DNA of 63,459 bases, the filler included, from Octopus bimaculoides (lineage: Eukaryota), in assembly GCF_001194135.2 (NCBI RefSeq). It is 8 parts of 8 records of this genome, joined end to end, with 100 filler letters (N's around TTAATTAATTAA, not from the genome) between each part and the next. Parts side by side here need not be neighbours in the genome. Positions count along the whole stretch, not along the records: positions 44,864 to 60,028 come from NC_068992.1; 7 more parts are not named here. One strand, given 5' to 3'. Under the pieces are notes generated by a model. That model ran no database searches and was not told where the DNA came from. It saw nothing but the letters and a program-made list of their open reading frames with translations. Position numbers and translations under genes: made by a program. Position 1 is the stretch's first letter. Every line of letters begins with the position of its first letter. Positions 44,864 to 60,028 of the stretch are shown here, in pieces.

Positions 44864-44990
44864 AGATAAACCTGTCGCCTAGCTTCCCTTCTGGCAGATT
44901 GGTACAATTCCCTGCTACCACCGTTCTTCCAGTCCTTCCAAGCCTGTTTCTTTTGTCTAATAGCCCTGTCTACCTCCTTGTTCCACCACC
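44864..44990 (-). mobile_element. RTE-like LINE fragment (endonuclease-RT linker)
   Basis: WWNKEVDRAIRQKKQAWKDWKNGGSRELYQSARREARRQVY. Confidence 0.85.
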
Positions 44991-45241
44991 ACGTATGTAC
45001 GTATGTATGTATGTATGCTTGCATGCATGCATGTATGTATGTATGTATGTATGTATGTATGTATGTATGTGTGTATGTAGTGTTTAGGTGTATCCTTCTT
45101 CTATCATTTTCTGCTGTTTGTGGGATAATTTATGAAACACTTCCCATATTTCATTGACACAAGTAAGTTGTTGTTGTGTAGCTTTTATTTCTTCTTAATT
45201 ACAAAACAATTTAATTATATATTTTTCATTGGGAACAACTA

Positions 45242-45283
<42 letters not shown>

Positions 45284-46039
45284 NNNNNNNNNNNNNNNNN
45301 NNNNNNNNNNNNNNNNNNNNNNNNNNNNNNNNNNNNNNNNNNNNNNNNNNNNNNNNNNNNNTGATATTACATTAAAACTGCTGTCATTATTTACCATGGT
45401 CTTCATTCAAAACAAATCTAATGGAATATAAATATTACATTTAGCAGCAGCAGCAGCAGCAGAAGTAGCACCAACAGGGTGTAGCCAACATTACATACAC
45501 ACATGTGTGTGTACGTGTGCGTGTGTGTGCTTGCGCGCGCGCGAGCACGCACGTACACGCATACACAAACACACAACCTGAAGTTGTTGTAGTCAGGCCT
45601 GATTTTATGGCAAAGAATTGACCCAATCCATCAATCAATGTTATATTTGCTTCACCTGAACTGTTTTATATGTATGTGTGTATATATATACATGGTAAAT
45701 GAAAGGTGGAAGATATATAAATACATATGCATGCGTGTGTGTGTGTACTCAAATCAGTGACCATAATCTTCTGTTGTTGTTTGTAGTGGTGGTGGTGGTG
45801 GTGGTGGTGGTGATGTTCTCATTTTTGTTTTATGTTGAGTAACGACAGGTAACACTGCTTCAATAAACAGCTGACACAGAATTAACCAATCAAAAACTTA
45901 GAAGTCACTCATAACACCTACACATTTCATATACCAGAATTCACTGTATTAATAGTTTCAAACACCATTTATCATCATCATCAATATCACCACCACTACC
46001 ACCACCACCACCACCACCACTGCCACCCCTGTTACCATT

Positions 46040-46860
46040 ACTCCCTTCTCTTCGTAACAAATGTCTCTACCTTGATGCTGCTGGTACCACATGAAAAGTA
46101 CCCAGTTCACTCTGTAAAGTACTTAATGTTAGGAAGGGTATCCAACCATAAAAAACTATACCAAAACAGATAGTGGGGCTTGGTTCAGTCTTCTTGACTT
46201 CAGAATTAAAGCTAGAGAGGCTCAGAGAGATAAACCACATGTGAAAAGAAGATTATGGAAGCTCAAAGATCCAGCAAGCCAACAAAAATTTAGAAACATT
46301 TAACTGAAAGCCTATGAGGATAGAGAAGAGGAGGAGGAGGAGGAGGAGGAAGAAAGGACAAATAGCTTAGAGGACAACCGGAAGTTCCTGTGGGACAATT
46401 TATTGGGTGCCACTAACTAAATCTCCATTATAGGAAGACAGCTGTTTCTACCTCTCTGTCTCTTTGTCAAACTCAAACCTTTCATCTTCTGACATAAGTT
46501 ACCCTCTTCAAATGCCCCTACACCTCTCATAATTCCTTGTCTTGCGAGTTACTTGGTAACTCTGCCAGTGCTGGTGCCACATGAAAAGCATCCAGTCCAC
46601 ACTGTAAAGTGGTTGGCATTTGGAAGGGCATCCAGTTGTAAAAATCATGCCAAAACTAATCCCACCTATGCTACTGGTGCCATGTAAAAAGCACTGAATC
46701 CACTCTGCAGAGTGGTTGGTGTTAGGAAGGGCATCTAGCCATAAAAACCCTGCCAAAACAGACACAAAAAGCTTAGGGTAGTTTTTCTACCTGACCACGT
46801 CCTGTCAACCATCCTACTCATGCATGCATGGAAGATGGATGTTAAATGATAATAATGATA

Positions 46861-46905
<45 letters not shown>

Positions 46906-47050
46906 TTTGTGTCAGGAGCTGGCAAGTTGGAGAGCTGTACTATGCTCCAGTTATCTATTTTGGCATGGTTCCTATGGCTGGATACCCTTCTTGGTGCCAA
47001 CCACTTTATAGTGTGTATTGGGTGCTTTTTACTTGGCACCAGCACAGGCG
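46040..47050. mobile_element. Cluster of LINE pieces: ORF remnant 46200-46420 (+), 3' UTR-like ~85-bp repeats with ATG/ATA-type tail 46480-46865 (+), inverted piece 46905-47050 (-)
   Basis: RRLWKLKDPASQQKF; repeated GTGGTTGG.(A/G)TT(T/A)GGAAGGGCATC motif at ~46120, ~46610 and ~46715, with its reverse complement near 46980 and 54410. Confidence 0.7.
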
Positions 47051-47385
47051 TTTTTTACATGGTACAAATTTGGTATTTCATAATTTTGTGTTCAAATCCA
47101 GCTAGAGCTGGCTTTAGTAAAGGTGACTTTGGGCCTCATCATATGAATGGACTTCTGTTTGATGCTGACTCACCATCTTATGTCTCCTTGTCATGCCTAG
47201 ATCTCTTCTCTATTCCAAAATCTTTGTTACATCTCCAGAAGACACTCCAAGGGATGAAAGTGATTTTATTTCCTTCGTACAACCATGTAAATGTTTAGAA
47301 CAAGGAGATTCTTTTGAAATTTACTTGTTACATATTGCTGAAAAACTTTCCAAAAGACTGAGTATTTTTTGTGTCTTTATTGTAG

Positions 47386-47590
47386 GTGGGCCCCAGGAGA
47401 ATGGTCAGAGTGCAGTTTGACCTGTGGAGAAGGACAAATGACACGGCAAGTGGAATGCAAGCAGAAATATTCTAAAACATTTTTCAAAAGAGTTTCTGCA
47501 TCAGCATGCCTGAACCAAACTCGTTTGATAACTGTGAAAAAATGTCAGAATAAACCCTGTTCACAATGGGAAATTAAAGAATGGTCAAAG
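47386..47590 (+). CDS. THSD4: ADAMTS-like protein (THSD4/ADAMTSL4/6 type), TSP1 exon 1 of 6 in the window
   Basis: AG|G acceptor, GTAATT donor; WAPGEWSECSLTCGEGQMTRQVECKQ...CQNKPCSQWEIKEWSK; phase 2 start, phase 0 end. Confidence 0.93.
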
Positions 47591-47862
47591 GTAATTTATA
47601 AGTAATCTTTTAAGAGCTATTTGTTGACTAACACCAAAATATAAATGTATTCTGATGGTATTAAATCATATTAGCAAGATAAAAGTTTGAGAAGGTCAAT
47701 GAAACTAAAATCTGGCCAGGCCATACATTCTTCAAAAACATATCCTGCATGTAGTTTTTTTGTCATATGAACTAGCCAGACAATTTTACGTTGTCCTTTA
47801 TTTTGTAAAGTTGTGTTTATATGTGCAACAATGTTTTGATCCGACATTTTCTATAATTCCAG

Positions 47863-48033
47863 TGTTCAGTTGAGTGTGGTCTTGGACAACGTAGTCGAAA
47901 AGTGACATGTGTGTCAGCTGATGGCAGAGTAATTCCTGACTATGAATGCCGTGAAACCAAACCTTCAGTTTCAGAAGTTTGCAATATGGGCTCCTGCGCC
48001 AAATCTTGGTTTTTCACAGAATGGTCAAAAGAG
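47863..48033 (+). CDS. THSD4: THSD4-like TSP1 exon 2
   Basis: 171 nt, CAG|...|GTGAGA; CSVECGLGQRSRKVTCVSADGRVIPDYECRETKPSVSEVCNMGSCAKSWFFTEWSKE, close to the vertebrate THSD4 stretch CxMGPCAKSWFLTEWSERC as recalled. Not called in the ORF track. Confidence 0.95.
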
Positions 48034-48639
48034 GTGAGAACTTTCCACTTTCTTCTCTGACAAAGATATTTTGCATATATCACACTCACATCTCCAGTTA
48101 CTCAACACCAGAGCTGGCTCAAGGCACCAGCAACTTGGGCAGTCACTTGAAGTGCCATGTGCTAGTGGGTGCCAAGGAGAGCATGACAAAGACATGGAAA
48201 TTTCCATGACTGTCAGCTTGTACACACCGATGTTCAGCCAGCAACCCTAGGACCAGCCCTGCCCAACACACTCCACTCACCACACTTCACTTACTCATTT
48301 TGTACTCCACTCACCCAGTACACATGCCACTCACTCACACACAGTACTCACCCACACATTGTTCACTCACTCAACATACACTCTACTCCCTTACCACTCA
48401 TGCCGTATATATGTATAAATGCCTTTTAATTGCTATGTTTAGATGAAGGCATAATGCCCACAATCTCCTTTACAAGTTCTCACAGACTGGTAAAATTTCT
48501 GCCCTTAATGTCCTCAGACATTTTTAAGACAATCTCTGTGGGAAAGATATGAACAACAATGGAATTCCAAATGGTCAACACTTAGAGAAAGAAGAACTAG
48601 GCATAGGGATTAGTATAGGGCCTTGAGAGGTCGATCACT

Positions 48640-49100
48640 TTAAGGGTGATGAATGGAGATGGGATGTAATGTATCTATCAGAGATCCAAGAAAAGCCATT
48701 CCTTCTGTCAATGCTGTTGTTATCCTTCAGCTTATGGAATATGTACTCATGCATTGCTTTTGGCTGATATGCCGCCTGCTTTACCTTCAAACTTCTGTTC
48801 TGATAATCCAGTCAAGCCTCCTTTGAATCGCATGAGACAGTTGTATTCTAAGAGTACCGGCTCAATAGTTCTTCTCCAGCTCTGAAGATGCTTTTGCTCT
48901 CACATTTGAGCATGTATTCCTTTCTTCACTGTTCATTTGTGACATTCAAAGGCTGTTTGGACTGACTTTATGCCTCTACCACCATCATTTCATCTCACGT
49001 AGATCCTATTGGTGTCACTGTTGATGTAGAAATTGCCAATGGTTATCAGTACCTTTCTGGTTTTGATGTCTAGGCTGCATATCTCATCAAGTGTCCATCA
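48640..49100 (-). mobile_element. Non-LTR retrotransposon remnant (R4/Dong- or RTEX-like RT C-terminal region)
   Basis: WTLDEICSLDIKTRKVLITIGNFYINSDTNRIYVR*NDGGRGIKSVQ matches WTxxELxxLDRKTRKxLT...SDxDRLYxPRxxGGRG. Confidence 0.8.
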
Positions 49101-49204
49101 AGTGTGTATAAAGAATAGATTTGTATTTAAGTTGTTGTGCGTGTACGTATGTGTGAGTGTGCGTTTGAGAGAGAGAGAGAAAGTGTGTGTGTGTGTATGT
49201 TTGT

Positions 49205-49568
49205 GTGTGTGGTTGACTAAATTTCTGTCTCCGTGTCTATCTGGTTGTACCAATGACAGTTACAAAATAGTTTCTATGCTTGGATCAAGGGAGGTAACTT
49301 AAATTTGAGAGTTTTACGTGTTCTAGGATTAACAGGCGTGTGTGTGTATGTGTGTGTGTGCGTGTGCATGTGTGTGTGTGTGTGTGTGTGCTTGTTTGTG
49401 TGTGAGCGTGTTTGTGTGTGAGCGTGTGTGTGTGGTTGCCTAAACATCTGTCCATTTGTCTCCTTGTCTACCTGGCTGTACCTGTGACAGTTACAGAACA
49501 GTTTCTATGATTGGAGCAAGGGAGATGACTTTAATTTGAGATTTTTATGCGATTTAGGATTAACAGGA

Positions 49569-49616
<48 letters not shown>

Positions 49617-49805
49617 GTGTGTGAGCGTGTTTGTGTGTGAGCGTGTGTGTGTGGTTGCCTAAACCTCTGTCCATTTGTCCCCTTGTCTACCTGGTTGTAC
49701 CTGTGACAGTTACAGAACAGTTTCTATGATCGGAGCAAGGAAGATGACTTTAATTTGAGATTTTTATGTGATTTAGGATTAACAGGAATGTGTGTGTGTG
49801 TGTGT
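49205..49805. repeat. Three-copy ~220-bp tandem repeat with embedded (GT)n
   Basis: Unit anchor GGTTG at 49211, 49434 and 49653; each unit ends TTTAGGATTAACAGG or a close variant. Confidence 0.92.
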
Positions 49806-50466
49806 GTGCGTTTATCTGTTTAGTATCTACTGTTGGAAAAAAATCGTAATTTCCCTGAAATAAAGATAGACCCAAGAATATTACACCATTATCAGGAAAA
49901 AGGTAAAATTCAGAGAAACAAAAGCTCGACTAAACTTAACTTGCAACTTTGCAGTTGTTTCAGCTGGTGTCTAGAGCCATCATCATGGTTTGCCTTTTTA
50001 TTTTCTTTCTTGATGCTGTTGATATGTCTGAAAGAGAAATAAAAAAAAGTTGATATTTTGTACATATCCTGTAAGTTTAGGGTTAGGTTATCTTCCATGT
50101 GTGGCCCACTAAAAGATGTGTTCACAAAGACCTGGTGTATCCTGTACAATCAGGACATTCAGTGGTTTTGTAGTTAGAGGTTTTCACTTTGCTAAGGAAA
50201 TCTAATAAAATGTAATCACTTTCATTGTTTTATCAATCATTGGACTGTGACTATACTGGGGCATCATTTTCAAGAGTTCAGTCAACCTCATTAATCTCAC
50301 ATAATTCTCTCCTTTATGGGAGAAGGGTCTTACAAAGCTCATGGATGCTGTCTCTTCACTTTTCAGTAATCAATTTAACAAATTGAAGTCTTTTAATTGC
50401 AGCACTCTATCTTCTACGCTTCTGTAGTATTATTACTTATACGTCTTTTATTTCTGTATTGTTTAG

Positions 50467-50640
50467 TGTTCCTCTTCCTGTGGTCATGGAGTCCTTCGAC
50501 GTCAAGTTCACTGTTCAGCTGATGATGGTAGCAACTTGGAAGACAGCAAATGTAAATTAAGTGAGAAACCAAAGTCAGAGAAGTCTTGTAAGAGTGACCA
50601 GCCTTGTGGTGGTTTATGGTTCACAGGGCCATGGTCTGAG
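50467..50640 (+). CDS. THSD4: THSD4-like TSP1 exon 3
   Basis: 174 nt, TAG|...|GTCAGT; CSSSCGHGVLRRQVHCSADDGSNLEDSKCKLSEKPKSEKSCKSDQPCGGLWFTGPWSE. Confidence 0.95.
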
Positions 50641-50729
50641 GTCAGTATTCAAAATTTACTAATAATACCAATAATAATAATAATAATGATGATAATAATA
50701 ATAATAATAATAATGATAATAATAATAAT

Positions 50730-51260
50730 TCTTTCTTTATTGGCCACCATGGCTGAACACAAAACATAGAGGACGATACACAGGTGAGGGACAGTGAGGT
50801 TTAAATGTGTAAGCAGTCAACAAACACAACGATTAACAAAGAGATTAAAACAACAATATGCTTCCCCAATAGGAGGGAGTTCCACCATAAGGTGACCAAA
50901 AAGACTTCATGCACTTTGGACCCCTTAACACCAATGGCTCCATGAAAGGTACCCTCTCTTCTCAGTTCCATCCAGCCTGCAGGTGCACACTTAGCGTAGG
51001 CCTATTCACGTGGGCCATTCTTGCCACATTCACCCACCTTTCAACGAACTCCCTCTCCAGCCTCACTTTCCTTTTCAGGGGGAACCTGAAAAAGTTAATG
51101 AGGCCTTGGCCAAAGAGGAGGGTACCCGTCTTCAACCCTTTCAATCACATCCACCACACAACCTCTTTTGCCATAGCCACCAGACAGAGAAAAATTGCCC
51201 TCCCTTCTCAGCCAAAGGAAGGAGGTGGGGCGATCAGTAATAATCCTTTCTGCTATGGTT
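50730..51260 (-). mobile_element. Probable L1/Tx1-like LINE 3' end
   Basis: Minus strand LFGQGLINFFRFPLKRKVRLEREFVERWVNVARM, then AATAAA (50741-50736) directly followed by a (TTA)n tract; clade assignment is by recollection only. Confidence 0.5.
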
Positions 51261-51421
51261 ATAAAACAGGTATAAAACAATCTCAACTAACCAACATGGA
51301 AGAAAAAACATAGAAATTGTAAAAAGTTTATTGAGAATTAAGAAAGTAAACTAACTTCCAGAATTATTTGTGATTTTCCTTCATGTTACAATTTTTGGAG
51401 AATTTTATTGTTCTGTTGCAG

Positions 51422-51607
51422 TGCTCTGCCACTTGTGGTCAAGCCTTTAAGATACGCAGTGCTGCATGTGTCAAAAAGTTGCATTCTACATCATTTGTTG
51501 TGGTTAGTCCAAATAACTGCGTGAAGAAAGACAAACCAGCAACAAAAGAACCCTGTCTTACAATGCCAGCATGTCCTGCCCAATGGCATATGACAGAATG
51601 GACACAG
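51422..51607 (+). CDS. THSD4: THSD4-like TSP1 exon 4
   Basis: 186 nt, CAG|...|GTATTA; CSATCGQAFKIRSAACVKKLHSTSFVVVSPNNCVKKDKPATKEPCLTMPACPAQWHMTEWTQ. Confidence 0.95.
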
Positions 51608-51689
51608 GTATTACGGCTTTCCACTCATTTTATCCTCATCTCTTCTTCACCTCCATATTCTCATATCATCTCTCTCTCTCTCTCTCTCT

Positions 51690-51724
<35 letters not shown>

Positions 51725-52366
51725 NNNNNNNNNNNNNNNNNNNNNNNNNNNNNNNNNNNNNNNNNNNNNNNNNNNNNNNNNNNNNNNNNNNNNNNNNNNN
51801 NNNNNNNNNNNNNNNNNNNNNNNNNNNNNNNNNNNNNNNNNNNNNNNNNNNNNNNNNNNNNNNNNNNNNNNNNNNNNNNNNNNNNNNNNNNNNNNNNNNN
51901 NNNNNNNNNNNNNNNNNNNNNNNNNNNNNNNNNNNNNNNNNNNNNNNNNNNNNNNNNNNNNNNNNNNNNNNNNNNNNNNNNNNNNNNNNNNNNNNNNNNN
52001 NNNNNNNNNNNNNNNNNNNNNNNNNNNNNNNNNNNNNNNNNNNNNNNNNNNNNNNNNNNNNNNNNNNNNNNNNNNNNNNNNNNNNNNNNNNNNNNNNNNN
52101 NNNNNNNNNNNNNNNNNNNNNNNNNNNNNNNNNNNNNNNNNNNNNNNNNNNNNNNNNNNNNNNNNNNNNNNNNNNNNNNNNNNNNNNNNNNNNNNNNNNN
52201 NNNNNNNNNNNNNNNNNNNNNNNNNNNNNNNNNNNNNNNNNNNNNNNNNNNNNNNNNNNNNNNNNNNNNNNNNNTATATATATAATCATATATATATATA
52301 ATTATATATATATATAATCGTTAATTACTTCTCATTATCAAATGATTTTGCTGTGTTTCATTCCAG

Positions 52367-52520
52367 TGCTCAGCTAGTTGTGGTACAGGTTCTAAAACAC
52401 GAGAAGTGAAATGCATGGACAGCCACTTGAGACACAGTACATTGTGCAACCCTGATAAACGACCTATCACAAGACAGAGCTGTGATTCTCATTCCTGCCA
52501 CCAGAAACCACTAAACACAG
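52367..52520 (+). CDS. THSD4: THSD4-like TSP1 exon 5
   Basis: 154 nt, CAG|...|GTAAAT; CSASCGTGSKTREVKCMDSHLRHSTLCNPDKRPITRQSCDSHSCHQKPLNT plus G (phase 1). Not called in the ORF track. Confidence 0.95.
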
Positions 52521-52795
52521 GTAAATTACTCACCTCTAATTAAGAGAGTATTATAAATATCTATTGTCACATTCTTAAATACATAAACATTAGATATATC
52601 ATTAGATGTATCTTTAATGACTCAGTCACAAATGACTCTTTACAGGGTCACCAGATAGGAGACCTGGCCTGAATGCTTTCTACGGGGTAGAGTTGTTGTT
52701 AAACTGGATGAAAGATTAACTCTACAAAGATATAAGACATGACTTAATGATGCTCCAACTTTTCACAGAATTAATAATGTTTTCTACTCTTTCAG

Positions 52796-52935
52796 ATCCA
52801 TCATGCCAGGATCAAATAAAGTTGTGTCGCCTTGTTGTACAGGCTCGTCTCTGTTCTTACAAGTACTACCAAAGGAAATGTTGTGAAACTTGCTACAAAC
52901 ATCGTGTACATAACAAACACCATCATTCTTCTTAA
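52796..52935 (+). CDS. THSD4: THSD4-like terminal exon, PLAC domain
   Basis: CAG acceptor; G|AT completes Asp; DPSCQDQIKLCRLVVQARLCSYKYYQRKCCETCYKHRVHNKHHHSS*. VVQARLCxYxYY is the PLAC signature of ADAMTSL4 and THSD4. Confidence 0.96.
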
Positions 52936-53354
52936 CAACTCTTCAAACTTCCTTGTTATTCTGTATGCTTTGTTTACTTCAGCAATTAAACTCAGTAGTA
53001 AATAGATGTCATCAACCCTTGAATCAACAACGATGACATACAATATATAAAACTTTATATTGAAACTATGTCAAACATTACAGTTTAGATATCCCTCTTC
53101 CTTACGACTCCTGGCTGTGTGTTCTAGCCAGCATTTATCTGTGTCTTCACCTTTAACACAAATTTATGTCCACAAGAAAACCAACTCATAACTAAGTTTC
53201 TGTGTAGTCAAGATTTACATGAGTCCATCAGATTATTTTGATGACATTAATAATTAGTATTGTGTTGTCTTAACTGTTGAATATGGTTTTAACACTTTGC
53301 ACACAAACAGATACGTACATACAATATATATATATGTATGTGTGTGTGTATGCA

Positions 53355-53395
<41 letters not shown>

Positions 53396-53542
53396 ATATA
53401 TACGCTATATAGATATGAATATGTATATACTCATATGTATGTGGTGTGTCAGTCTACATGTGTGTGTGTGTGCTTGGGTATGTAAATTTTATTTGTTTTA
53501 CATCTGTTTTACCGCACTAGCATGGGAATGTATATGTACATA

Positions 53543-54091
53543 AATAAATACAGATTATACATCATGGCTAACTTTCAACTTTCATGTCTCCACAAACATT
53601 CATCTGACCCTTTTGTTATTCACCAAAAGTTTTAAAATTTGAGGAATTATATCCTTTATCTGACTAATCACTTCACACATCTACTTTACCTGAAGTACAT
53701 GTATGTGTACACATAAAAACAAACACACACACACACACATGATATGTTTCATCACAAAATGAATTGTGTCTGTGACAGTTCAATACACTTGAACATCTTC
53801 ATCAGCAAAGTAGCAAAGAAGATGAAAGATGTTCCTTACAAATGTTTATACACTTGAGAATGAGAAGTGGTGATACACGGAAACAGTTGTAATATCATAA
53901 ACAAAAATATGTACTAATTGATGTGTAAATAAGTTTTTCAAGAGTGTTTAAGTCACTGAAATCAAAATTAAAAAGACAATTTTAATTTACCTTAATGAAA
54001 TGAACTTTTGTAGTGATTATATGGATAAATATTTTATAATTAAACTAAAAGAACATTTTTCATGTTAAGTAATCAGATTTAGATCAATAAA
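53543..54091 (+). promoter_or_regulatory. Candidate polyadenylation signals for the THSD4-like gene
   Basis: AATAAA at 53543-48 and 54086-91 downstream of the stop codon; motif only, in AT-rich DNA. Confidence 0.3.
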
Positions 54092-54284
54092 GTATAGACA
54101 TTGATATAATTTTCATTTATAAAATCAAGAGCACTCATACCAGGTTTGTAAAGTGTAAAATAATATTATCAAATATACAAGATACAGTAAGACATGATTC
54201 ATGTCCATTTGATGAGTGAATTATGTAATTGTCACTTAATCTCACAAAGCAAATCCACAGATTTGTCTAGCTGTTTTGCAATCA

Positions 54285-54520
54285 TCCTCATCCTCATCAT
54301 TGCTTAATGTCTGCTTTCCATGCTGGCATGGGTTGGACAGTTTGAGTGAGGGCTGGCGAGCCAGAAGGCTGCACTGGCCTCCAATCTAATCTGGCAAAAT
54401 TTCTACAGCTGGAAGCCCTTCCTAACGCCAACCACTCCGCTATTTATGTACCACTGGTACAATGCCCAGTTAGGTGGCACTAGCATTGACCGTGCTTAAA
54501 TGGTACATTTTACGGGCCAC
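54285..54520 (-). mobile_element. LINE 3' UTR-like / SINE-like piece related to 46480-46865
   Basis: (ATC)-type tail, TTTCCATGCTGGCATGGGTTGGAC ... GCCCTTCCTAACGCCAACCACTCC. Confidence 0.7.
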
Positions 54521-54567
54521 TGGCACAGGATCAAGTCAGGCAACAATTGGCAACAACTAGACTTGAA

Positions 54568-54606
<39 letters not shown>

Positions 54607-55137
54607 NNNNNNNNNNNNNNNNNNNNNNNNNNNNNNNNNNNNNNNNNNNNNNNNNNNNNNNNNNNNNNNNNNNNNNNNNNNNNNNNNNNNNNNNNNNNNN
54701 NNNNNNNNNNNNNNNNNNNNNNNNNNNNNNNNNNNNNNNNNNNNNNNNNNNNNNNNNNNNNNNNNNNNNNNNNNNNNNNNNNNNNNNNNNNNNNNNNNNN
54801 NNNNNNNNNNNNNNNNNNNNNNNNNNNNNNNNNNNNNNNNNNNNNNNNNNNNNNNNNNNNNNNNNNNNNNNNNNNCCTTATGAGGTTTTTTTCACGCTAG
54901 CTACTTGATAAATTCTTGTAAAAGAATTCGTCCTATTATTGAAATTTAAATATATTACCAGAATATATTCAGTGCTGAATTTATTCTGAGTAAGAGGCAT
55001 ATTTACCGAGATGCAATTCGAAATTCCCGCCACTTACATAGGAAAATAGCGATGAACAGTCGTCCATATACTATGCTGGATACATGGTATTCGTTTGGTA
55101 TGTTGATTCACTGTTTATTTCTATTTTTCTGGACCAT

Positions 55138-55198
55138 ATTATACTGACGAGTAGAAGTTGTATAATACTACAATAACTACGAAATCATGATCTATAAT
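55138..55198 (+). ncRNA. Type I hammerhead ribozyme, canonical core and three stems
   Basis: Stem I ATTATA/TATAAT (55138-43/55193-98); CTGACGA 55144-50; stem II GTAG/CTAC plus inner TTGTA/TACAA; GAAA 55181-84; palindromic stem III ATCATGAT; predicted cleavage after AUC at 55192. Confidence 0.88.
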
Positions 55199-57574
55199 TT
55201 AGTTCGTTTTTAAGGGGTTGTCTTTGAGAGTTGCATTTCCTCGCATTCGGTAAAAAATGTGCTTTTATAGTAGTCTGACCTTNNNNNNNNNNNNNNNNNN
55301 NNNNNNNNNNNNNNNNNNNNNNNNNNNNNNNNNNNNNNNNNNNNNNNNNNNNNNNNNNNNNNNNNNNNNNNNNNNNNNNNNNNNNNNNNNNNNNNNNNNN
55401 NNNNNNNNNNNNNNNNNNNNNNNNNNNNNNNNNNNNNNNNNNNNNNNTATATAGCAATAAGAAAATGGAGGGGAATATGTGGCACTCATCAACTTCCAGG
55501 CACTGTACTCTGTTAATTAACCTGTTTATTTTCCAACCAAAAGGACAATAAAGACAATATACAAACACATATGACACACTATGTCATATCAACAATTAAA
55601 AATTCAAAAATACATCTAGTAAACCGAAGAAGGGACGTATATGGGGAAAGTCACAGAAGATCCTGTAATAATCATTTTCTATCGCAGCCCCATGGCCAAT
55701 GATCAATTTGTGTAGTTGTAATGTCAAATATTGGTTGAACATAAAATATATAATAGCATTGTATACTGACACAGTGAATAAAAAAGATCTCTTCTAATAT
55801 ATTCTTTGGTAAATATTTCAGTAGAGGTCACCAAGAGTATTCAGATATCCAGAGTTCAAATCTTACCAGAAGTATCAATGTCTAGTATTTAGATAATGTA
55901 CCATTGTCTTTTTTCAACACTCACCACCCACCACATACATACACACTTCCAAAGATGCCCACCTCAATCTTTTTGTTAGAAAGTCAAATCATACGATGTC
56001 ATTCATCAAATAAATAAATAAATAAATAAATAAAACCTCAGTGAAATTTGTGCTCAATAAATGACTGAAAATATTTGACTTTGTAGGTTTATCAAACCCA
56101 TCTTTAAAATGTCAGCAGTTTGATCATATCTATGGTCACTGACCTGACTGATTATCTCCTTTTTTGTCAGCACTCAGTAGGTTTCTTAGAGTAGAATTGT
56201 AAGATTCTTCTCTAATATATCATTATAATGTATTCACATGTTAGCTTGTGGAAATCTTCTAGAAATATTTCATTCACTGACTGTCAGAGCTAAGTTACTA
56301 GGAGCCTCGATTAAGCTAATTCACTACGAAGAATCATAATTCTACCCAAGGGTAAATTATTTCGTCTGTTAAATATTTAAAGAAGCAGGATAATGGATTT
56401 CGTTGGTTGGTGAGGAAATTATATTTACTATCAACTGAGTGCACTTACTTTCTGAAGAAAGTCAAAACCATCTGAAGAAACTGAGATAGCACAAGACCAT
56501 TGTATTTTGAGGAATTTAATTTTCTAAGTTCAAACCATGTGAAAGTAAATTTTATATTTTTCTTTCCTCCAATTTATGTTTTTACCAGTAAAACAAACCA
56601 TAGTACCTCCACAACAGCTCTCAAGTCCGATAATTAAATATTTTCTATCGTACAAGTGTTCCTTACAATACAGAACTTAATTATTTCTCCGCATTAATTA
56701 TATTTTCCTAGCATTTCTCTTTTCTCAGCTGCTTTTGTGTCAGGTTTTCTAAAGAAAACTTGCTTCAATTCAGGAAATTGTTTTGAGTTTGATTCAGAAT
56801 AATATTATTAAAATATTTTCATGATTTCTTTACATTTGTTTATTCGTTCTTGTAAAATAAATCCATAATTTAGTAAAAAAAAAATAATAATAGTGTTCAT
56901 TGTTGTATATGTTAAAATATTATTTCAAAACAGAGTTTGTATTTATCAAAAGTGCAATAGTTACTATATATTGTAATGATATTTTGTGCTTTCAGCAAAT
57001 TACTTCATTGTGTTAGATAATTTCATTCCTGAATATAATATAAGACATACATGAGTATATTGCAACCATGTTTATGTTGAATTCTGGAAACTTGCAGTAA
57101 AAGAAAATCCAGAATGGACTCGACCTACGTTTCTTAGAAGAAAAGAAATTTTGGAAGTCTTGAAATAATATTTTGTATTTTTCATAATTATTTTACATTT
57201 CTGTATTCAAATTGTACCATTGTCTGATTTATTTTACATCCTTCTGGCTTCTGGAAAGTAAAAACCATTTACATTGTGAGGTTGATTTAATCAACTGTTC
57301 CAAAAATATCTGCTCTTATGTCTCACTTAGAACTATCATTATCATGAAGCAAATCTTACCGTGTGCAGATTTTCCTGAAAATCTACTACATATGTGGGAA
57401 ATTCTGTCTGTGGGTATGTTTGTGGAGTTGTTAGCTAACTCCTCCTACATCATTGTATCAATTTTGATGAAACTTGACACATGAGTAGAACTCATGTCTG
57501 GGAACCTCATGACATACTCAGATTGTTGAAAAAAAATCGATAATAGGGCCCCTGGAAGGGATCCTTATATATAT

Positions 57575-57690
57575 CTAATATATTTCAGTTTTTCCTTGGG
57601 GCTGGCCAGATTGGAGCAATGTCGAGTATAACCAGCTGAAATTGCAAAGATAATCTGGAACTCGACTGAGGAATGAAAACATGTTGTGTA
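57575..57690 (+). repeat. Unclassified dispersed repeat, inverted homolog of 59140-59250
   Basis: Shared TTGGG..CCAGAT..CTGAAA.TG.AA.GA..ATCTGG.AC.TCGACTGAGGAA.GAA. Confidence 0.65.
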
Positions 57691-57801
57691 AAGTACTATC
57701 TGTCTGAGGTCCATGTTGTGACTTGACAAACAGTACAAAACTCCAGTAGACACAATATCTTCAATCAACAACCTCACAATATTGTATACTGTGCGACATT
57801 T

Positions 57802-57839
<38 letters not shown>

Positions 57840-58989
57840 GATGATAATAATAATAATAATTATGATGATGATGATGATGANNNNNNNNNNNNNNNNNNNN
57901 NNNNNNNNNNNNNNNNNNNNNNNNNNNNNNNNNNNNNNNNNNNNNNNNNNNNNNNNNNNNNNNNNNNNNNNNNNNNNNNNNNNNNNNNNNNNNNNNNNNN
58001 NNNNNNNNNNNNNNNNNNNNNNNNNNNNNNNNNNNNNNNNNNNNNNNNNNNNNNNNNNNNNNNNNNNNNNNNNNNNNNNNNNNNNNNNNNNNNNNNNNNN
58101 NNNNNNNNNNNNNNNNNNNNNNNNNNNNNNNNNNNNNNNNNNNNNNNNNNNNNNNNNNNNNNNNNNNNNNNNNNNNNNNNNNNNNNNNNNNNNNNNNNNN
58201 NNNNNNNNNNNNNNNNNNNNNNNNNNNNNNNNNNNNNNNNNNNNNNNNNNNNNNNNNNNNNNNNNNNNNNNNNNNNNNNNNNNNNNNNNNNNNNNNNNNN
58301 NNNNNNNNNNNNNNNNNNNNNNNNNNNNNNNNNNNNNNNNNNNNNNNNNNNNNNNNNNNNNNNNNNNNNNNNNNNNNNNNNNNNNNNNNNNNNNNNNNNN
58401 NNNNNNNNNNNNNNNNNNNNNNNNNNNNNNNNNNNNNNNNNNNNNNNNNNNNNNNNNNNAAGCGAAGTTTACCTTTCATTTAAAGTTTAAATTTTTAAAC
58501 GATAAAACATACCTGTAATATACTGTTTGTTCGAATCAAGTACATTCGCGCGCGCACGCACACACTGCTCGTTCTTGTGTTTCTGCAAGAAATCAACGAT
58601 TGATAGATTTCGAGGTATAAATGACTGTATTAACTGCAGTTTTTTTTTTTTATTTTAGCTATTTTATCGAACATCAATCAGAAGTTGACTGCGTTGAGAT
58701 TTAAACGTTGAGACTTAGAGATCGAAGCCGCCCAATTTCGGTGACCCTACTGATAAAGGAAAATCATATAATGTTCTCTTAGTAAGCGTGTTTATAAGTT
58801 TTATATTTGTTGTTTATTGTTTCTAAGTGATATGAAATAGAATCAAGATATGTATGTATGTATGTATGTACGTATGCATACATACATACTTCAGACAGTT
58901 TGATGATGGCAAGTCGAAATTTCGAACTCACTGTCGACCTTGTCCTTATAATAATCAATGAATATGTACGCTAATTCTTCAGTTTAATG

Positions 58990-59039
<50 letters not shown>

Positions 59040-59044
<5 letters not shown>

Positions 59045-59260
59045 ATGGGACAAAAACGCAGTAGAGTACAATAAAACATTTGGACAGATAGACGATACAA
59101 AGGCGGACAGGAGAAACAACAATTAGAAGGACAGGACGGGTCATTTGTGGCCTTCTTTCCTCAGTCAAGGTACCAGATGTCATTACAGTTTCAGGTTTGA
59201 GACAGTTCGATCTGGTTGTCCCCAAAAGAGTCTAAGCTAAGAGCATTAGACTTTATGTAA
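59040..59260 (-). repeat. Unclassified dispersed repeat; part of it (59040-59130) recurs at 59765-59850
   Basis: ACAATAAAACATTTGGA.AGATAGAC.ATACAA.GGCGGACAGGAGA.ACAACAATTAGAA occurs twice. Confidence 0.7.
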
Positions 59261-59879
59261 GAAAGCTCGCGAATGTGTACGGCAGTAAAGACAAAAAAAA
59301 CGGAGAACATGGTACACAATTGCAAATACAAAGTAACAAGTATATAACAACAGGTGTCTTTCGACTGAGAACGAATCAAATTGAGCTGGCGTGTATGAAG
59401 TGAAAGCCTGAAGACAGGAACATAGGAGATGGACATAAGAGGTGTTGGCGGTCGGCAGTCAGGCCAAGAAAGAAAGATTAGGGCTGGCCGGACACCGGTC
59501 ATGTGGAAGGAGAGAGCGGGATTGAAGGATTAGAAAGAAAAATCAGATAAAAAAAAAGAATAGGTACAGGGGAGATAAACGATGTGGAAAAGTGGGAGTT
59601 CCAAGAAATGTGAGAAAGAGAGGAGGAGCGAGAAAAAGAAAAGTGGGAGAAAATATGAAGGGGACTAAACGATAACGTAAGAATCGTACAAAATTTACAT
59701 ACTCAAGGGGAGCACAAGTATGTACGTACGCCGCTATATGTATATATAAATATTTTTAAAAAATGAACAAAAACGTTATAGAGGACAATAAAACATTTGG
59801 ATAGATAGACAATACAATGGCGGACAGGAGACACAACAATTAGAATGACAGAGAAGCAAAAATTAAAGAACGGGTCTGT

Positions 59880-60028
59880 TTGGCAAGTAACTTGCTTACT
59901 AACCACCGACTCTAGGTTCAGTCTCACTGCGTGGCACGCTGAGCAAGTGTTTTCTACTATAGTTGCAGGCTGACCAAAACTTTGTGGATGGATTTGGTAG
60001 ACGGAAACTGAAAGAAGCCCGTCGTATG
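59880..60028 (+). mobile_element. SINE family C head
   Basis: AAGTAACTTGCTTACTAACCAC...GGTTCAGTCTCACTGCGTGGCAC...GGTAGACGGAAACTGAAAGAAGCCCGTCGTAT. Confidence 0.85.

What the first reader, a model, noticed from the sequence alone, without database searches (positions are those of the whole stretch)
55138..55198. Textbook hammerhead ribozyme 2.3 kb downstream of the THSD4-like stop, same strand
Seen: perfect CUGACGA/GAAA/AUC core, 6-bp stem I, 4+5-bp stem II and palindromic stem III; further hairpins lie upstream (AATTCTT/AAGAATT at 54911-54928). It is the best-formed motif in the window. Inference: read-through or long-3'UTR transcripts of the ADAMTSL gene would be cut after 55192, which could affect termination or isoform stability; alternatively it is simply a young element copy.
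Basis: partly seen in the sequence, partly recalled or inferred. Interest (0 to 1): 0.82.

Follow-up and report, generated by a model that had tools for sequence, protein, structure and literature searches.

The report
Hammerhead ribozyme inside a dispersed repeat
The motif is a real type I hammerhead ribozyme sequence, but it is one of several hundred copies carried by a mobile repeat inserted downstream of an ADAMTS-like gene, which is an ordinary situation in animal genomes and shows no sign of regulating that gene.

Summary
The motif at 55138-55198 (+) is there as described. All invariant hammerhead core letters are present. Helix I is 6 bp, helix II is 4+6 bp, and the site reads ...AUC^U. 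My descriptor finds it once in the piece and never in 3000 shuffles. Rfam Hammerhead_1 aligns to exactly these coordinates end to end, but at 24.8 bits, below the gathering score of 34.

"Textbook" overstates it. Helix III is only 2 bp as a monomer. Its palindrome AUCAUGAU forms 8 bp only between two copies, which is the known dimer-dependent design of animal type I hammerheads.

The motif is not specific to this locus. Genomic reads pile up about 250-fold over it, against 0-2 on unique DNA nearby, so there are several hundred copies. Among the best-supported variants in those copies, none falls on an invariant core letter. N7 and H17 vary only within allowed letters, and three helix pairs vary on both sides at matching frequencies.

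The 407-bp island lies between two assembly gaps inside a (TA)n tract. This fits a 5'-truncated Penelope-like or retrozyme-type element.

RNA reads of the ADAMTS-like gene fade about 300 nt past the stop. Reads cross the cleavage site without piling up there. The regulatory reading is unsupported. This is a new member of a known kind.

The parts
55138..55198 (+). Type I hammerhead ribozyme motif, helix I open. The predicted self-cleavage site lies between C55192 and U55193.
   Evidence: Sequence. Rfam RF00163 full-length alignment, 24.8 bits. Unique descriptor hit with 0 hits in 3000 shuffles.
55138..55143 (+). Helix I, 5' strand AUUAUA. It pairs with 55193-55198 (UAUAAU), 6 bp, all A-U.
   Evidence: Pair probabilities 0.85-0.93 in the 88-nt context. 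The pair 55139/55197 varies on both sides among genomic copies, T>C 8% and A>G 14%.
55131..55134 (+). Possible outer extension of helix I: GGAC pairs with 55202-55205 (GUUC), beyond a 3x3 internal loop (CAU/UUA). The loop sits where loop 1 of canonical type I hammerheads sits.
   Evidence: Pair probabilities 0.92. Most other copies have other letters at 55131, 55204 and 55205, so only 3 of these pairs look general.
55144..55150 (+). Core box CUGACGA (C3-A9, N7 = C).
   Evidence: Among copies, the only listed variant is at the free position N7 (55148 C>T, 9%).
55151..55180 (+). Helix II: GUAG/CUAC (4 bp, G10.1-C11.1 at its base), a 2x2 AA/AA internal loop, GUUGUA/UACAAU (6 bp including one G-U), and the hexaloop UAAUAC. 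It is much longer than the Rfam consensus (26 nt versus 10 nt between the conserved flanks).
   Evidence: Pair probabilities 0.89-0.98. The pairs 55154/55177 (G>A 6%, C>U 9%) and 55161/55170 (U>C 23%, A>G 24%) vary on both sides at matching frequencies.
55181..55192 (+). Core GAA, then A15.1 ... U16.1, then H17. The 8-nt palindrome AUCAUGAU (55184-55191) is helix III. It is 2 bp plus a CAUG loop within one molecule, and 8 bp between two molecules.
   Evidence: The monomer does not form it (probability 0.0). Cofolding two copies gives -32.2 kcal/mol against 2 x -13.5, with the 8-bp intermolecular helix III and both sets of helices I and II kept. In the copies, the only listed variant is the allowed 55192 C>U, 7%.
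54944..55282 (+). The repeat copy that carries the ribozyme. It is sense on the + strand, has the ribozyme about 90-130 nt from its 3' end, and runs into the assembly gap at 55283. Its 5' limit is approximate.
   Evidence: DNA read depth at >=80% likeness rises stepwise in the 5'-to-3' direction: about 45 at 54947-60, about 250 at 55003-55200, and 500-600 at 55213-55254. Unique DNA nearby gives 0-2. Reads continue past 55256 with the consensus ...TGTGTTTATTATGGTAGTYTGACCTTAGAGTCCCTCATA.
54876..54943 (.). Segment of a related but more abundant repeat, with the hairpin at 54911-54928. In other copies it is followed directly by (TA)n. It is weakly similar (about 60%) to 55209-55268, so it may be the 3' end of a preceding element copy. 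Its orientation is not settled.
   Evidence: Depth 230-880. Loose ends after 54943 read TTAATTATATATATATA.... Local alignment score is 25 forward and 21 reverse.
54567..54606 (.). (TA)20 microsatellite next to the left gap. The sequence after the right gap starts TATATA (55448-55453). The island with its two gaps therefore sits inside a (TA)n tract.
52796..52935 (+). Last coding exon of the neighbouring THSD4/ADAMTSL-like gene (PLAC domain). The stop codon is at 52933-52935.
   Evidence: Pfam PLAC, E = 1.6e-11, and TSP1_ADAMTS in the preceding exon. The best named homologues are THSD4 proteins. RNA coverage begins at about 52792.

Best explanation
This is a genuine type I hammerhead ribozyme motif carried by a dispersed repeat family of several hundred copies. 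It is not a gene-specific element.

The family is most likely a Penelope-like element terminal repeat (pLTR), or a non-autonomous "retrozyme" derived from one. The copy here is a 5'-truncated fragment, sense on the + strand, with the ribozyme near its 3' end. It is inserted in a (TA)n microsatellite downstream of an ADAMTS-like/THSD4-like gene.

The ribozyme is of the dimer-dependent design. Helices I and II fold on their own. Helix III is only 2 bp within one molecule, and becomes a stable 8-bp helix only when two copies pair through the palindrome AUCAUGAU. Cleavage after C55192 is therefore expected mainly in transcripts with two nearby copies (tandem or partial-tandem element transcripts). 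There it would cut out unit-length element RNA.

A lone copy in a read-through transcript of the gene would cut poorly, if at all.

Shown: the motif, its multi-copy nature, the pattern of variation in the copies, the thermodynamic preference for the dimer, and the flanking (TA)n.

Inferred: the affinity with Penelope-like elements or retrozymes, the role in processing element RNA, and catalytic activity itself.
For: - Motif: complete core and three helices. It is the one descriptor hit in the piece, with 0 hits in 3000 shuffles. Rfam Hammerhead_1 aligns end to end at exactly 55138-55198, E = 1.6e-4.
- Copy number: three DNA read sets, each sampled to 1.9 Gb, give depth about 240-290 over the motif and up to 600-800 just 3' of it. 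Single-copy DNA 400 bp away gives 0-2.
- Selection on the fold across copies:
  - None of the 13 best-supported variable positions within the 61 nt falls on the 13 constrained core letters (p = 0.03). Counting the helix III palindrome as well gives p = 0.004.
  - N7 and H17 vary only within allowed letters.
  - Three base pairs vary on both sides at matched frequencies. In each, the more frequent single change is the one that gives a G-U wobble. The chance of three full pairs among 13 random sites is 0.02.
  - An expressed paralogue differs at 16 of 125 positions upstream of the motif but at 1 of 49 within it (Fisher p = 0.02).
- Dimer design: monomer helix III has probability 0. The dimer is 5.2 kcal/mol better than two monomers, with an 8-bp helix III.
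- Match to published architecture: canonical metazoan type I hammerheads have helix I of 6 bp, helix II of 4 bp, and helix III of 1-2 bp capped by a small palindromic loop, and are active as dimers (PMC4209133).
- Element type:
  - Depth rises stepwise in the 5'-to-3' direction, as 5' truncation would give.
  - The island sits between (TA)n tracts.
  - Other copies abut (TA)n.
  - RNA reads show tandem junctions with periods of 174 and 85 nt.
  - The island is bounded by assembly gaps.
  - PMC8557442 describes Penelope-like elements as 5'-truncated, in partial tandems or inverted arrangements, biased towards microsatellites including (TA)n, with hammerheads near the 3' ends, and troublesome for short-read assemblies.
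PMC13282606 reports active Penelope families in Octopus vulgaris.
Against: - No full-length consensus of the family could be built, because no genome of this organism is searchable here.
- No reverse transcriptase or GIY-YIG open reading frame is in the piece.
- The Rfam score is below the gathering threshold.
- Linkage of the paired variants within single copies was not observed; only matching frequencies were. Some reads carry one of the two changes with no other difference (the "cleanest = 0" column).
- Only the 40 best-supported of 112 variants were listed, so rare core variants surely exist.
- The depth steps could reflect modular sharing between families rather than 5' truncation.
- No DNA read joins the island's end to its start, so a simple tandem array of about 400-bp units is not shown.
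- RNA reads show no cleavage ends and no circular junction at the site.
- In the 174-nt tandem variant, the letters in front of the second unit do not read CUGA.
Confidence: 0.8

Rival explanations
1. Exapted regulatory ribozyme. This copy cuts long-3'UTR or read-through transcripts of the ADAMTS-like gene after 55192, and so shapes 3'-end formation or isoform stability.
For: - The motif is on the same strand as the gene, 2.2 kb past the stop.
- Many RNA assemblies hold 72-89% of the words of 53750-54555 and up to 100% of 55448-56000, so some RNA exists on both sides.
- The motif in this copy has no private substitutions.
- Precedent: the hammerhead in the 3'UTR of Clec2 genes, and the intronic hammerheads of amniotes (PMC6155905).
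Against: - RNA depth drops from 8-20 in the exon to 0-2 by about 53220, and is 0-5 at 53750-54290.
- The high word shares are partly explained by an embedded, highly expressed repeat at 54290-54450.
- Downstream RNA does not track the gene across runs.
- There is no pile-up of read ends at 55192/55193, and depth is continuous across it.
- Helix III needs a second copy.
- The motif is one of several hundred copies, so its intactness needs no local selection.
Confidence: 0.05
2. The carrier is not related to Penelope-like elements. It is another kind of hammerhead-bearing repeat, such as an Sm-alpha-like SINE/satellite or a tandem satellite like newt satellite 2, collapsed into gaps by the assembler.
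For: - The island begins with CCTT and ends with GACCTT, and is bounded by gaps on both sides, as a collapsed array might look.
- RNA reads show short tandem junctions.
- No reverse transcriptase is nearby.
Against: - No DNA read joins 55282 back to 54877.
- The consensus continuation after GACCTT is AGAGTCCCTCATA, not the island's start.
- Depth is uneven along the unit, which a uniform satellite would not give.
- I saw no pol III A or B boxes by eye.
- A recent preprint argues that animal retrozymes are themselves non-autonomous derivatives of Penelope-like elements (10.64898/2026.07.22.740005), so this distinction may be moot.
Confidence: 0.12
3. Chance resemblance in AT-rich DNA, with no ribozyme ancestry.
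For: - The score is below Rfam's gathering threshold.
- All six pairs of helix I are A-U.
- The isolated 61-mer prefers another fold: -8.9 kcal/mol against -2.6 for the hammerhead fold.
Against: - 0 hits in 3000 shuffles.
- The covariance-model alignment is end to end.
- The core is kept across several hundred diverged copies, with paired changes in the helices.
- Helices I and II are predicted at >0.85 in the native context.
Confidence: 0.02

Closest known systems
Canonical metazoan type I hammerhead ribozymes (Rfam RF00163 Hammerhead_1; newt satellite 2, Schistosoma Sm-alpha, invertebrate non-LTR retrozymes)
   Same: - Identical core.
- Helix I open, 6 bp, then an internal loop.
- Helix II with a 4-bp base and G10.1-C11.1.
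- Helix III of 2 bp with a palindromic tetraloop, which implies action as a dimer (PMC4209133, PMC7229834).
- AT-rich carrier, many genomic copies, transcribed.
   Different: - Loop 2 is replaced by an internal loop plus a further 6-bp hairpin. There are 26 nt where the Rfam consensus has 10, which pulls the score to 24.8 bits, below the gathering score of 34.
- The conserved loop 1-loop 2 contact letters could not be recognised.
- A regular tandem array is not demonstrated at this locus.
Hammerheads in the pseudo-LTRs of Penelope-like retroelements (Cervera and de la Pena 2014, PMC4209133; Craig et al. 2021, PMC8557442)
   Same: - Dimer-type helix III with a palindrome.
- Longer-than-usual helix II.
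- Position near the element's 3' end.
- A 5'-truncation-like depth profile.
- Partial tandems.
- (TA)n microsatellite target.
- Assembly gaps around copies.
   Different: [quoted passage not shown] Here helix I is 6 bp and that nucleotide is absent.
- No RT or GIY-YIG coding sequence is linked to this copy in the piece.
Discontinuous hammerhead in the 3'UTR of mammalian Clec2 genes, and intronic hammerheads of amniotes (RECK, CTCL, DTNB), as reviewed in PMC6155905
   Same: A hammerhead in the transcribed neighbourhood of a protein-coding gene, on the gene's strand.
   Different: - Those motifs are single-copy and conserved at orthologous positions, and fold as stable monomers.
- This one is a member of a family of several hundred copies, with a helix III too weak for a monomer.
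- It lies beyond the point where the gene's RNA coverage ends.

Membership tests
Hammerhead ribozyme, type I | Invariant core: C3 U4 G5 A6 N7 G8 A9, G12 A13 A14, the A15.1-U16.1 pair, and H17 (not G) before the cleavage site | tested here: met
   CUGACGA at 55144-55150. GAAA at 55181-55184. U55191. C55192.
Hammerhead ribozyme, type I | Three helices around the core, with helices II and III closed by loops and helix I open (type I topology) | tested here: met
   Helix I 6 bp, helix II 4+6 bp, helix III 2 bp plus a tetraloop. The Rfam alignment covers the whole model. Helices I and II have probability >0.85. Helix III forms only in the dimer.
Hammerhead ribozyme, type I | Score at or above Rfam's gathering threshold for RF00163 (34 bits) | tested here: not met
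   24.8 bits, E = 1.6e-4 on an 88-nt search. Not reported at all in the larger searches. The shortfall comes from the 26-nt helix II insert and the all-A-U helix I, not from the core.
Hammerhead ribozyme, type I | Tertiary contact between loop 1 and loop 2, which gives fast cleavage at physiological Mg2+ | tested here: inconclusive
   The geometry fits: 6 bp to an internal loop in helix I, and 4 bp to an internal loop in helix II. The contact letters cannot be identified from sequence alone.
Hammerhead ribozyme, type I | Self-cleavage that leaves 2',3'-cyclic phosphate and 5'-OH ends | not testable with these tools
   Standard RNA-seq reads cross the site, and no pile-up of ends is reported. 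These libraries are unstranded, mix several hundred copies and both strands, and do not capture such ends.
Hammerhead ribozyme, type I | Conservation of core and helices across related copies, with compensatory changes | tested here: met
   Variant table from 3 DNA read sets over several hundred copies. No listed variant falls on a constrained core letter. Three pairs vary on both sides at matching frequencies. Caveats: linkage was not seen, and only the top 40 of 112 variants were listed.
Metazoan non-LTR retrozyme | Type I hammerhead within head-to-tail tandem repeats of about 150-450 bp, AT-rich | tested here: inconclusive
   One unit of about 340-400 bp between two gaps. The motif itself is 26% GC. 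RNA reads show junctions with periods of 174 nt and 85 nt from other copies. No DNA read joins the end of this unit to its start.
Metazoan non-LTR retrozyme | Expression as unit-length linear and circular RNA joined at the cleavage site | tested here: inconclusive
   The family is transcribed. No back-joint at 55192/55193 was reported. The unit's ends are hidden in gaps, so such a joint could not have been mapped.
Penelope-like element (pLTR) | Association with an ORF encoding a TERT-like reverse transcriptase and a GIY-YIG endonuclease | tested here: not met
   No such ORF or domain in the 15-kb piece. The element ORF search found nothing. This is expected for a 5'-truncated or non-autonomous copy, so it lowers the membership claim but not the likeness.
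Penelope-like element (pLTR) | 5' truncation, partial tandem or inverted copies, and a microsatellite target, often (TA)n | tested here: met
   Depth rises in the 5'-to-3' direction. A second repeat 3'-end-like segment lies directly upstream. (TA)n is on both sides and next to other copies. The features are as listed in PMC8557442.

The most novel reading that the evidence does not exclude
This particular copy has been co-opted. Rare read-through transcripts of the ADAMTS-like gene reach it and are cut there, perhaps helped in trans by RNA from other copies pairing through the AUCAUGAU palindrome. The ribozyme would then act as a fail-safe terminator or isoform switch. That would be a first case of trans-dimer-activated hammerhead regulation of a host gene in a mollusc.
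Probability: 0.04. Interest if true: 0.6.

Novelty: new member of a known kind. Interest (0 to 1): 0.22.

Why it matters
On its own it matters little. Type I hammerheads riding on retroelements are widespread in animals, and Rfam-level annotation has already counted hundreds in a cephalopod genome.

It has three modest uses:
- It documents a hammerhead family with an unusually elaborate helix II. This variant falls below Rfam's gathering score and is lost by the speed filters in whole-window scans, so routine annotation undercounts such copies.
- It is a further example of the dimer-dependent palindromic helix III outside amphibians and flatworms.
- It flags a repeat that breaks the assembly at this locus.

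If the family proved to make circular RNAs in this animal, it would extend retrozyme biology to a new group.

Tried and rejected
- Whole-piece Rfam scan at gathering score, and island scan at E<=10. Neither gave a hammerhead hit. I put this down to the filters, because the 88-nt scan finds it.
- Looking for further copies in the piece: pattern search, repeat finder and sensitive blastn of the island against the piece. There are none, so no alignment of real copies could be made and no covariance model was built.
- Fetching other copies through a spurious ORF of the element: no candidates.
- Fetching a gap-free version of the locus, or an orthologue:
  - The gene's protein returned only distant THSD4 homologues and one short fragment.
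  - Four flanking ORFs were not on record.
- Exact-pattern scan of metagenome contigs for this hammerhead variant: no match.
It was replaced by three shorter stretches.
- The palindrome GGTTCGTCCATCGATCGATGGACGAACC, which appears at many loose ends of the DNA reads, was considered as part of the element. I rejected this. It also appears on unrelated unique sequence, so it is a library linker.
- A terminal inverted repeat (CCTTATGAGG / CCTCATAAGG), which would suggest a DNA transposon, was considered. It is only 10 nt, and other copies carry conserved sequence further upstream, so it does not mark the ends.
- Pfam scan of element frames and of the longest ORFs, looking for RT or endonuclease: none.

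Full report
**What is there.** The finding's piece (44864-60028) is AT-rich (36% GC) and broken by five runs of N. The motif sits in a 407-bp island, 54876-55282, between a 269-N gap and a 165-N gap.

The sequence 55138-55198 on the + strand reads AUUAUA CUGACGA GUAG AA GUUGUA UAAUAC UACAAU AA CUAC GAAA UCAUGA UC^ UAUAAU. Every invariant hammerhead position is present: C3 U4 G5 A6, G8 A9, the G10.1-C11.1 pair, G12 A13 A14, the A15.1-U16.1 pair, and H17 = C. Cleavage would fall between 55192 and 55193. Helix II is 4+6 bp. The "palindromic stem III" is not a stable stem.

**Is it more than chance?**
- I wrote a descriptor with an exact core, helix I of at least 5 bp, helix II of at least 4 bp and helix III of at least 2 bp. 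It hits the real 13.5 kb once, at exactly these coordinates. It never hits in 3000 dinucleotide-preserving shuffles, both strands. A relaxed version hits 0.004 times per shuffle.
- A loose pattern without the helices is uninformative: 3 matches against 1.7 expected.
- Rfam gave nothing at gathering score on the piece, and nothing at E<=10 on the island.
- On 55125-55212 alone, RF00163 Hammerhead_1 aligns to 55138-55198, model positions 1-45 of 45. The score is 24.8 bits against a gathering score of 34, E = 1.6e-4.
- I attribute the earlier misses to the speed filters, since the same 24.8-bit hit should have passed E<=10 on 407 nt. The low score comes from a 26-nt helix II where the model expects 10, and from all-A-U pairs in helix I.
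- So it is a real hammerhead-type sequence, but not a "textbook" one by Rfam's own cut-off.

**Fold.**
- Alone, the 61-mer prefers another fold: -8.9 kcal/mol against -2.6 for the hammerhead fold.
- In its native 88-nt context, helix I, a 4-bp outer extension of helix I beyond a 3x3 internal loop (55131-55134 with 55202-55205), and both parts of helix II are all predicted at 0.85-0.98 probability. Helix III is predicted at 0.0.
- Two copies cofolded give -32.2 kcal/mol against 2 x -13.5. The structure is the classic double hammerhead, with the palindrome AUCAUGAU (55184-55191) forming an 8-bp intermolecular helix III and both ribozymes keeping helices I and II.
- This matches the published description of canonical metazoan type I hammerheads: helix I of 6 bp, helix II of 4 bp, and helix III of 1-2 bp capped by a small palindromic loop. 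That design is inefficient as a monomer and active as a dimer when a second copy is near (PMC4209133; also PMC7229834 for amphibian retrozymes).

**It is a repeat.**
- Raw genomic reads of the same organism were sampled to 1.9 Gb per run.
- Those reads cover the motif about 240-290-fold at >=80% likeness.
- Unique sequence 400-500 bp away is covered 0-2-fold in the same runs. The family therefore has several hundred copies.
- Depth is not flat. It is about 45 at 54947-54960, about 250 from 55003 to 55200, and 500-800 at 55213-55254. There is a separate peak of 230-880 at 54877-54932.
- Most reads are 80-95% alike and only about 3% are >=99% alike. This copy has letters that 94-97% of the others lack (55065, 55089, 55221). 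It is therefore not a particularly young copy.

**Is the ribozyme maintained in the family?** The per-position variant table (best-supported 40 of 112 variants) lists 13 variable positions within the 61 nt.
- None falls on the 13 constrained core letters (p = 0.03). None falls on the helix III palindrome either (p = 0.004 when it is included).
- The free position N7 varies (C>U, 9%).
- H17 varies only to another allowed letter (C>U, 7%).
- Three base pairs vary on both sides at similar frequencies: 55139/55197 (U>C 8%, A>G 14%), 55154/55177 (G>A 6%, C>U 9%) and 55161/55170 (U>C 23%, A>G 24%). In each pair the double change keeps a Watson-Crick pair, and the more frequent single change gives a G-U wobble.
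- Three complete pairs among 13 random sites would occur with p = 0.02.
- An expressed paralogue assembled in two RNA runs differs at 16 of 125 positions upstream of the motif but at 1 of 49 within it (Fisher p = 0.02).
- Each test is modest, and I could not see linkage within single copies. All of them point the same way.

**What kind of element?**
- The stepwise rise of depth towards the right suggests a retroelement with 5'-truncated copies, sense on the + strand, with the ribozyme 90-130 nt from the 3' end.
- Reads continue past 55256 with the consensus ...TGTGTTTATTATGGTAGTYTGACCTTAGAGTCCCTCATA, so the element runs on into the gap.
It belongs to a more abundant relative. In other copies it is followed directly by (TA)n, and it is weakly similar to 55209-55268. 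It may be the 3' end of a preceding copy, which would make a partial tandem.
- The island with its gaps lies inside a (TA)n tract: (TA)20 at 54567-54606, and TATATA straight after the right gap.
- RNA reads from other copies show head-to-tail junctions with periods of 174 nt and 85 nt.
- 5' truncation, partial tandems, hammerheads near the 3' end, a bias towards microsatellites including (TA)n, and trouble for short-read assemblies are all features listed for Penelope-like elements (PMC8557442). Animal retrozymes have recently been argued to be their non-autonomous derivatives (10.64898/2026.07.22.740005).
- No reverse transcriptase or GIY-YIG sequence is in the piece. I could not retrieve other copies. 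The assignment to the Penelope-like/retrozyme group is therefore an inference, not a demonstrated membership.

- The upstream exons encode TSP1 repeats and a terminal PLAC domain (Pfam E = 1.6e-11). The best named homologues are THSD4 proteins. The stop codon is at 52933-52935 on the + strand.
- In three raw RNA-seq runs, each sampled at 6%, depth is 8-20 in the last exon and 4-12 in the first 250 nt of 3'UTR. It falls to 0-2 by about 53220.
- Depth is 0-5 over 53750-54290. The very high depth at 54290-54450 comes from an unrelated, highly expressed repeat.
- Downstream of the island, depth is about 9 in one run and 0 in another. This does not track the gene.
- Over the island itself, RNA reads come from many copies in both orientations. 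They cross 55192/55193 at undiminished depth, and no pile-up of ends is reported.
- The bulk of the gene's mRNA therefore ends about 1.9 kb before the motif. Nothing indicates cleavage at this locus, and a lone copy lacks the second helix III strand it needs.
- The refuting condition "transcription never reaches the site" is not met either. Many RNA assemblies hold most words on both sides. The libraries are unstranded and cannot capture ribozyme ends.
- I therefore rate the regulatory reading as unsupported, at about 5%, rather than refuted.

**Comparison with what is known, and verdict.**
- Type I hammerheads on mobile repeats have been known since newt satellite 2 and Schistosoma Sm-alpha. 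They are widespread in Penelope-like elements and retrozymes (PMC4209133, PMC7229834, PMC6155905).
- An Rfam-based annotation counted 235 hammerhead 1 loci in the giant squid genome (PMC6962438). Active Penelope families are reported in Octopus vulgaris (PMC13282606).
- This locus is one more member of that kind. Its only peculiarity is an extended, bipartite helix II that drops it below Rfam's threshold.
- Interest is low.

Noticed in passing
window 54290-54450 (related pieces at 46081-46166, 46571-46656, 46674-46793, 46923-47049): A short interspersed repeat with very high RNA read depth (600-1100, against 0-5 in its flanks). It occurs several times in both orientations within the gene's introns and downstream region. 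It largely explains why RNA assemblies "hold" the region downstream of the stop.
   Followed up: partly
window 55170 (also 55174, 55178): A>G at 55170 is seen in 40-58% of RNA reads but in about 24% of DNA reads. The position is in the double-stranded helix II. This could reflect which copies are expressed, or A-to-I editing of the hairpin. The two were not separated.
   Followed up: no
window 55619-55960: Unique sequence downstream of the island is covered about 9-fold by RNA reads in run X39, as deep as the gene's last exon in that run, but not at all in X40. This suggests an independent, tissue-specific transcript of unknown strand.
   Followed up: no
loose ends of DNA reads of runs X22-X24: The palindrome GGTTCGTCCATCGATCGATGGACGAACC follows many reads at arbitrary positions, including on unique sequence. 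It is a library bridge or linker (proximity-ligation type), not genome. The "opposite strands" joints in these runs should be discounted for the same reason.
   Followed up: yes
window 49120-49788: Three tandem copies of a unit of about 219-231 nt (70-94% alike), each containing (TG)n-rich stretches, in an intron of the TSP1/PLAC gene.
   Followed up: no
window 54955-54993: A 40-nt near-perfect hairpin (CAGAATATATTCAG..CTGAATTTATTCTG, 85% complementary). It lies in the least-repeated part of the island (DNA depth about 45-90), at the apparent 5' limit of the ribozyme-bearing copy.
   Followed up: no
window 59050-59134 and 59767-59851: An 85-nt direct repeat, 89% identical, 717 nt apart, next to a (TA)n tract at 58983-59042. 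It could be the two ends of another small insertion.
   Followed up: no
window 55448-55485 and 55543-55610: The first 40 nt after the right-hand gap are also repetitive (DNA depth about 60-75, against 0-2 further on). A second stretch is moderately repetitive (depth 10-25). The insertion complex may therefore extend beyond the gap.
   Followed up: no
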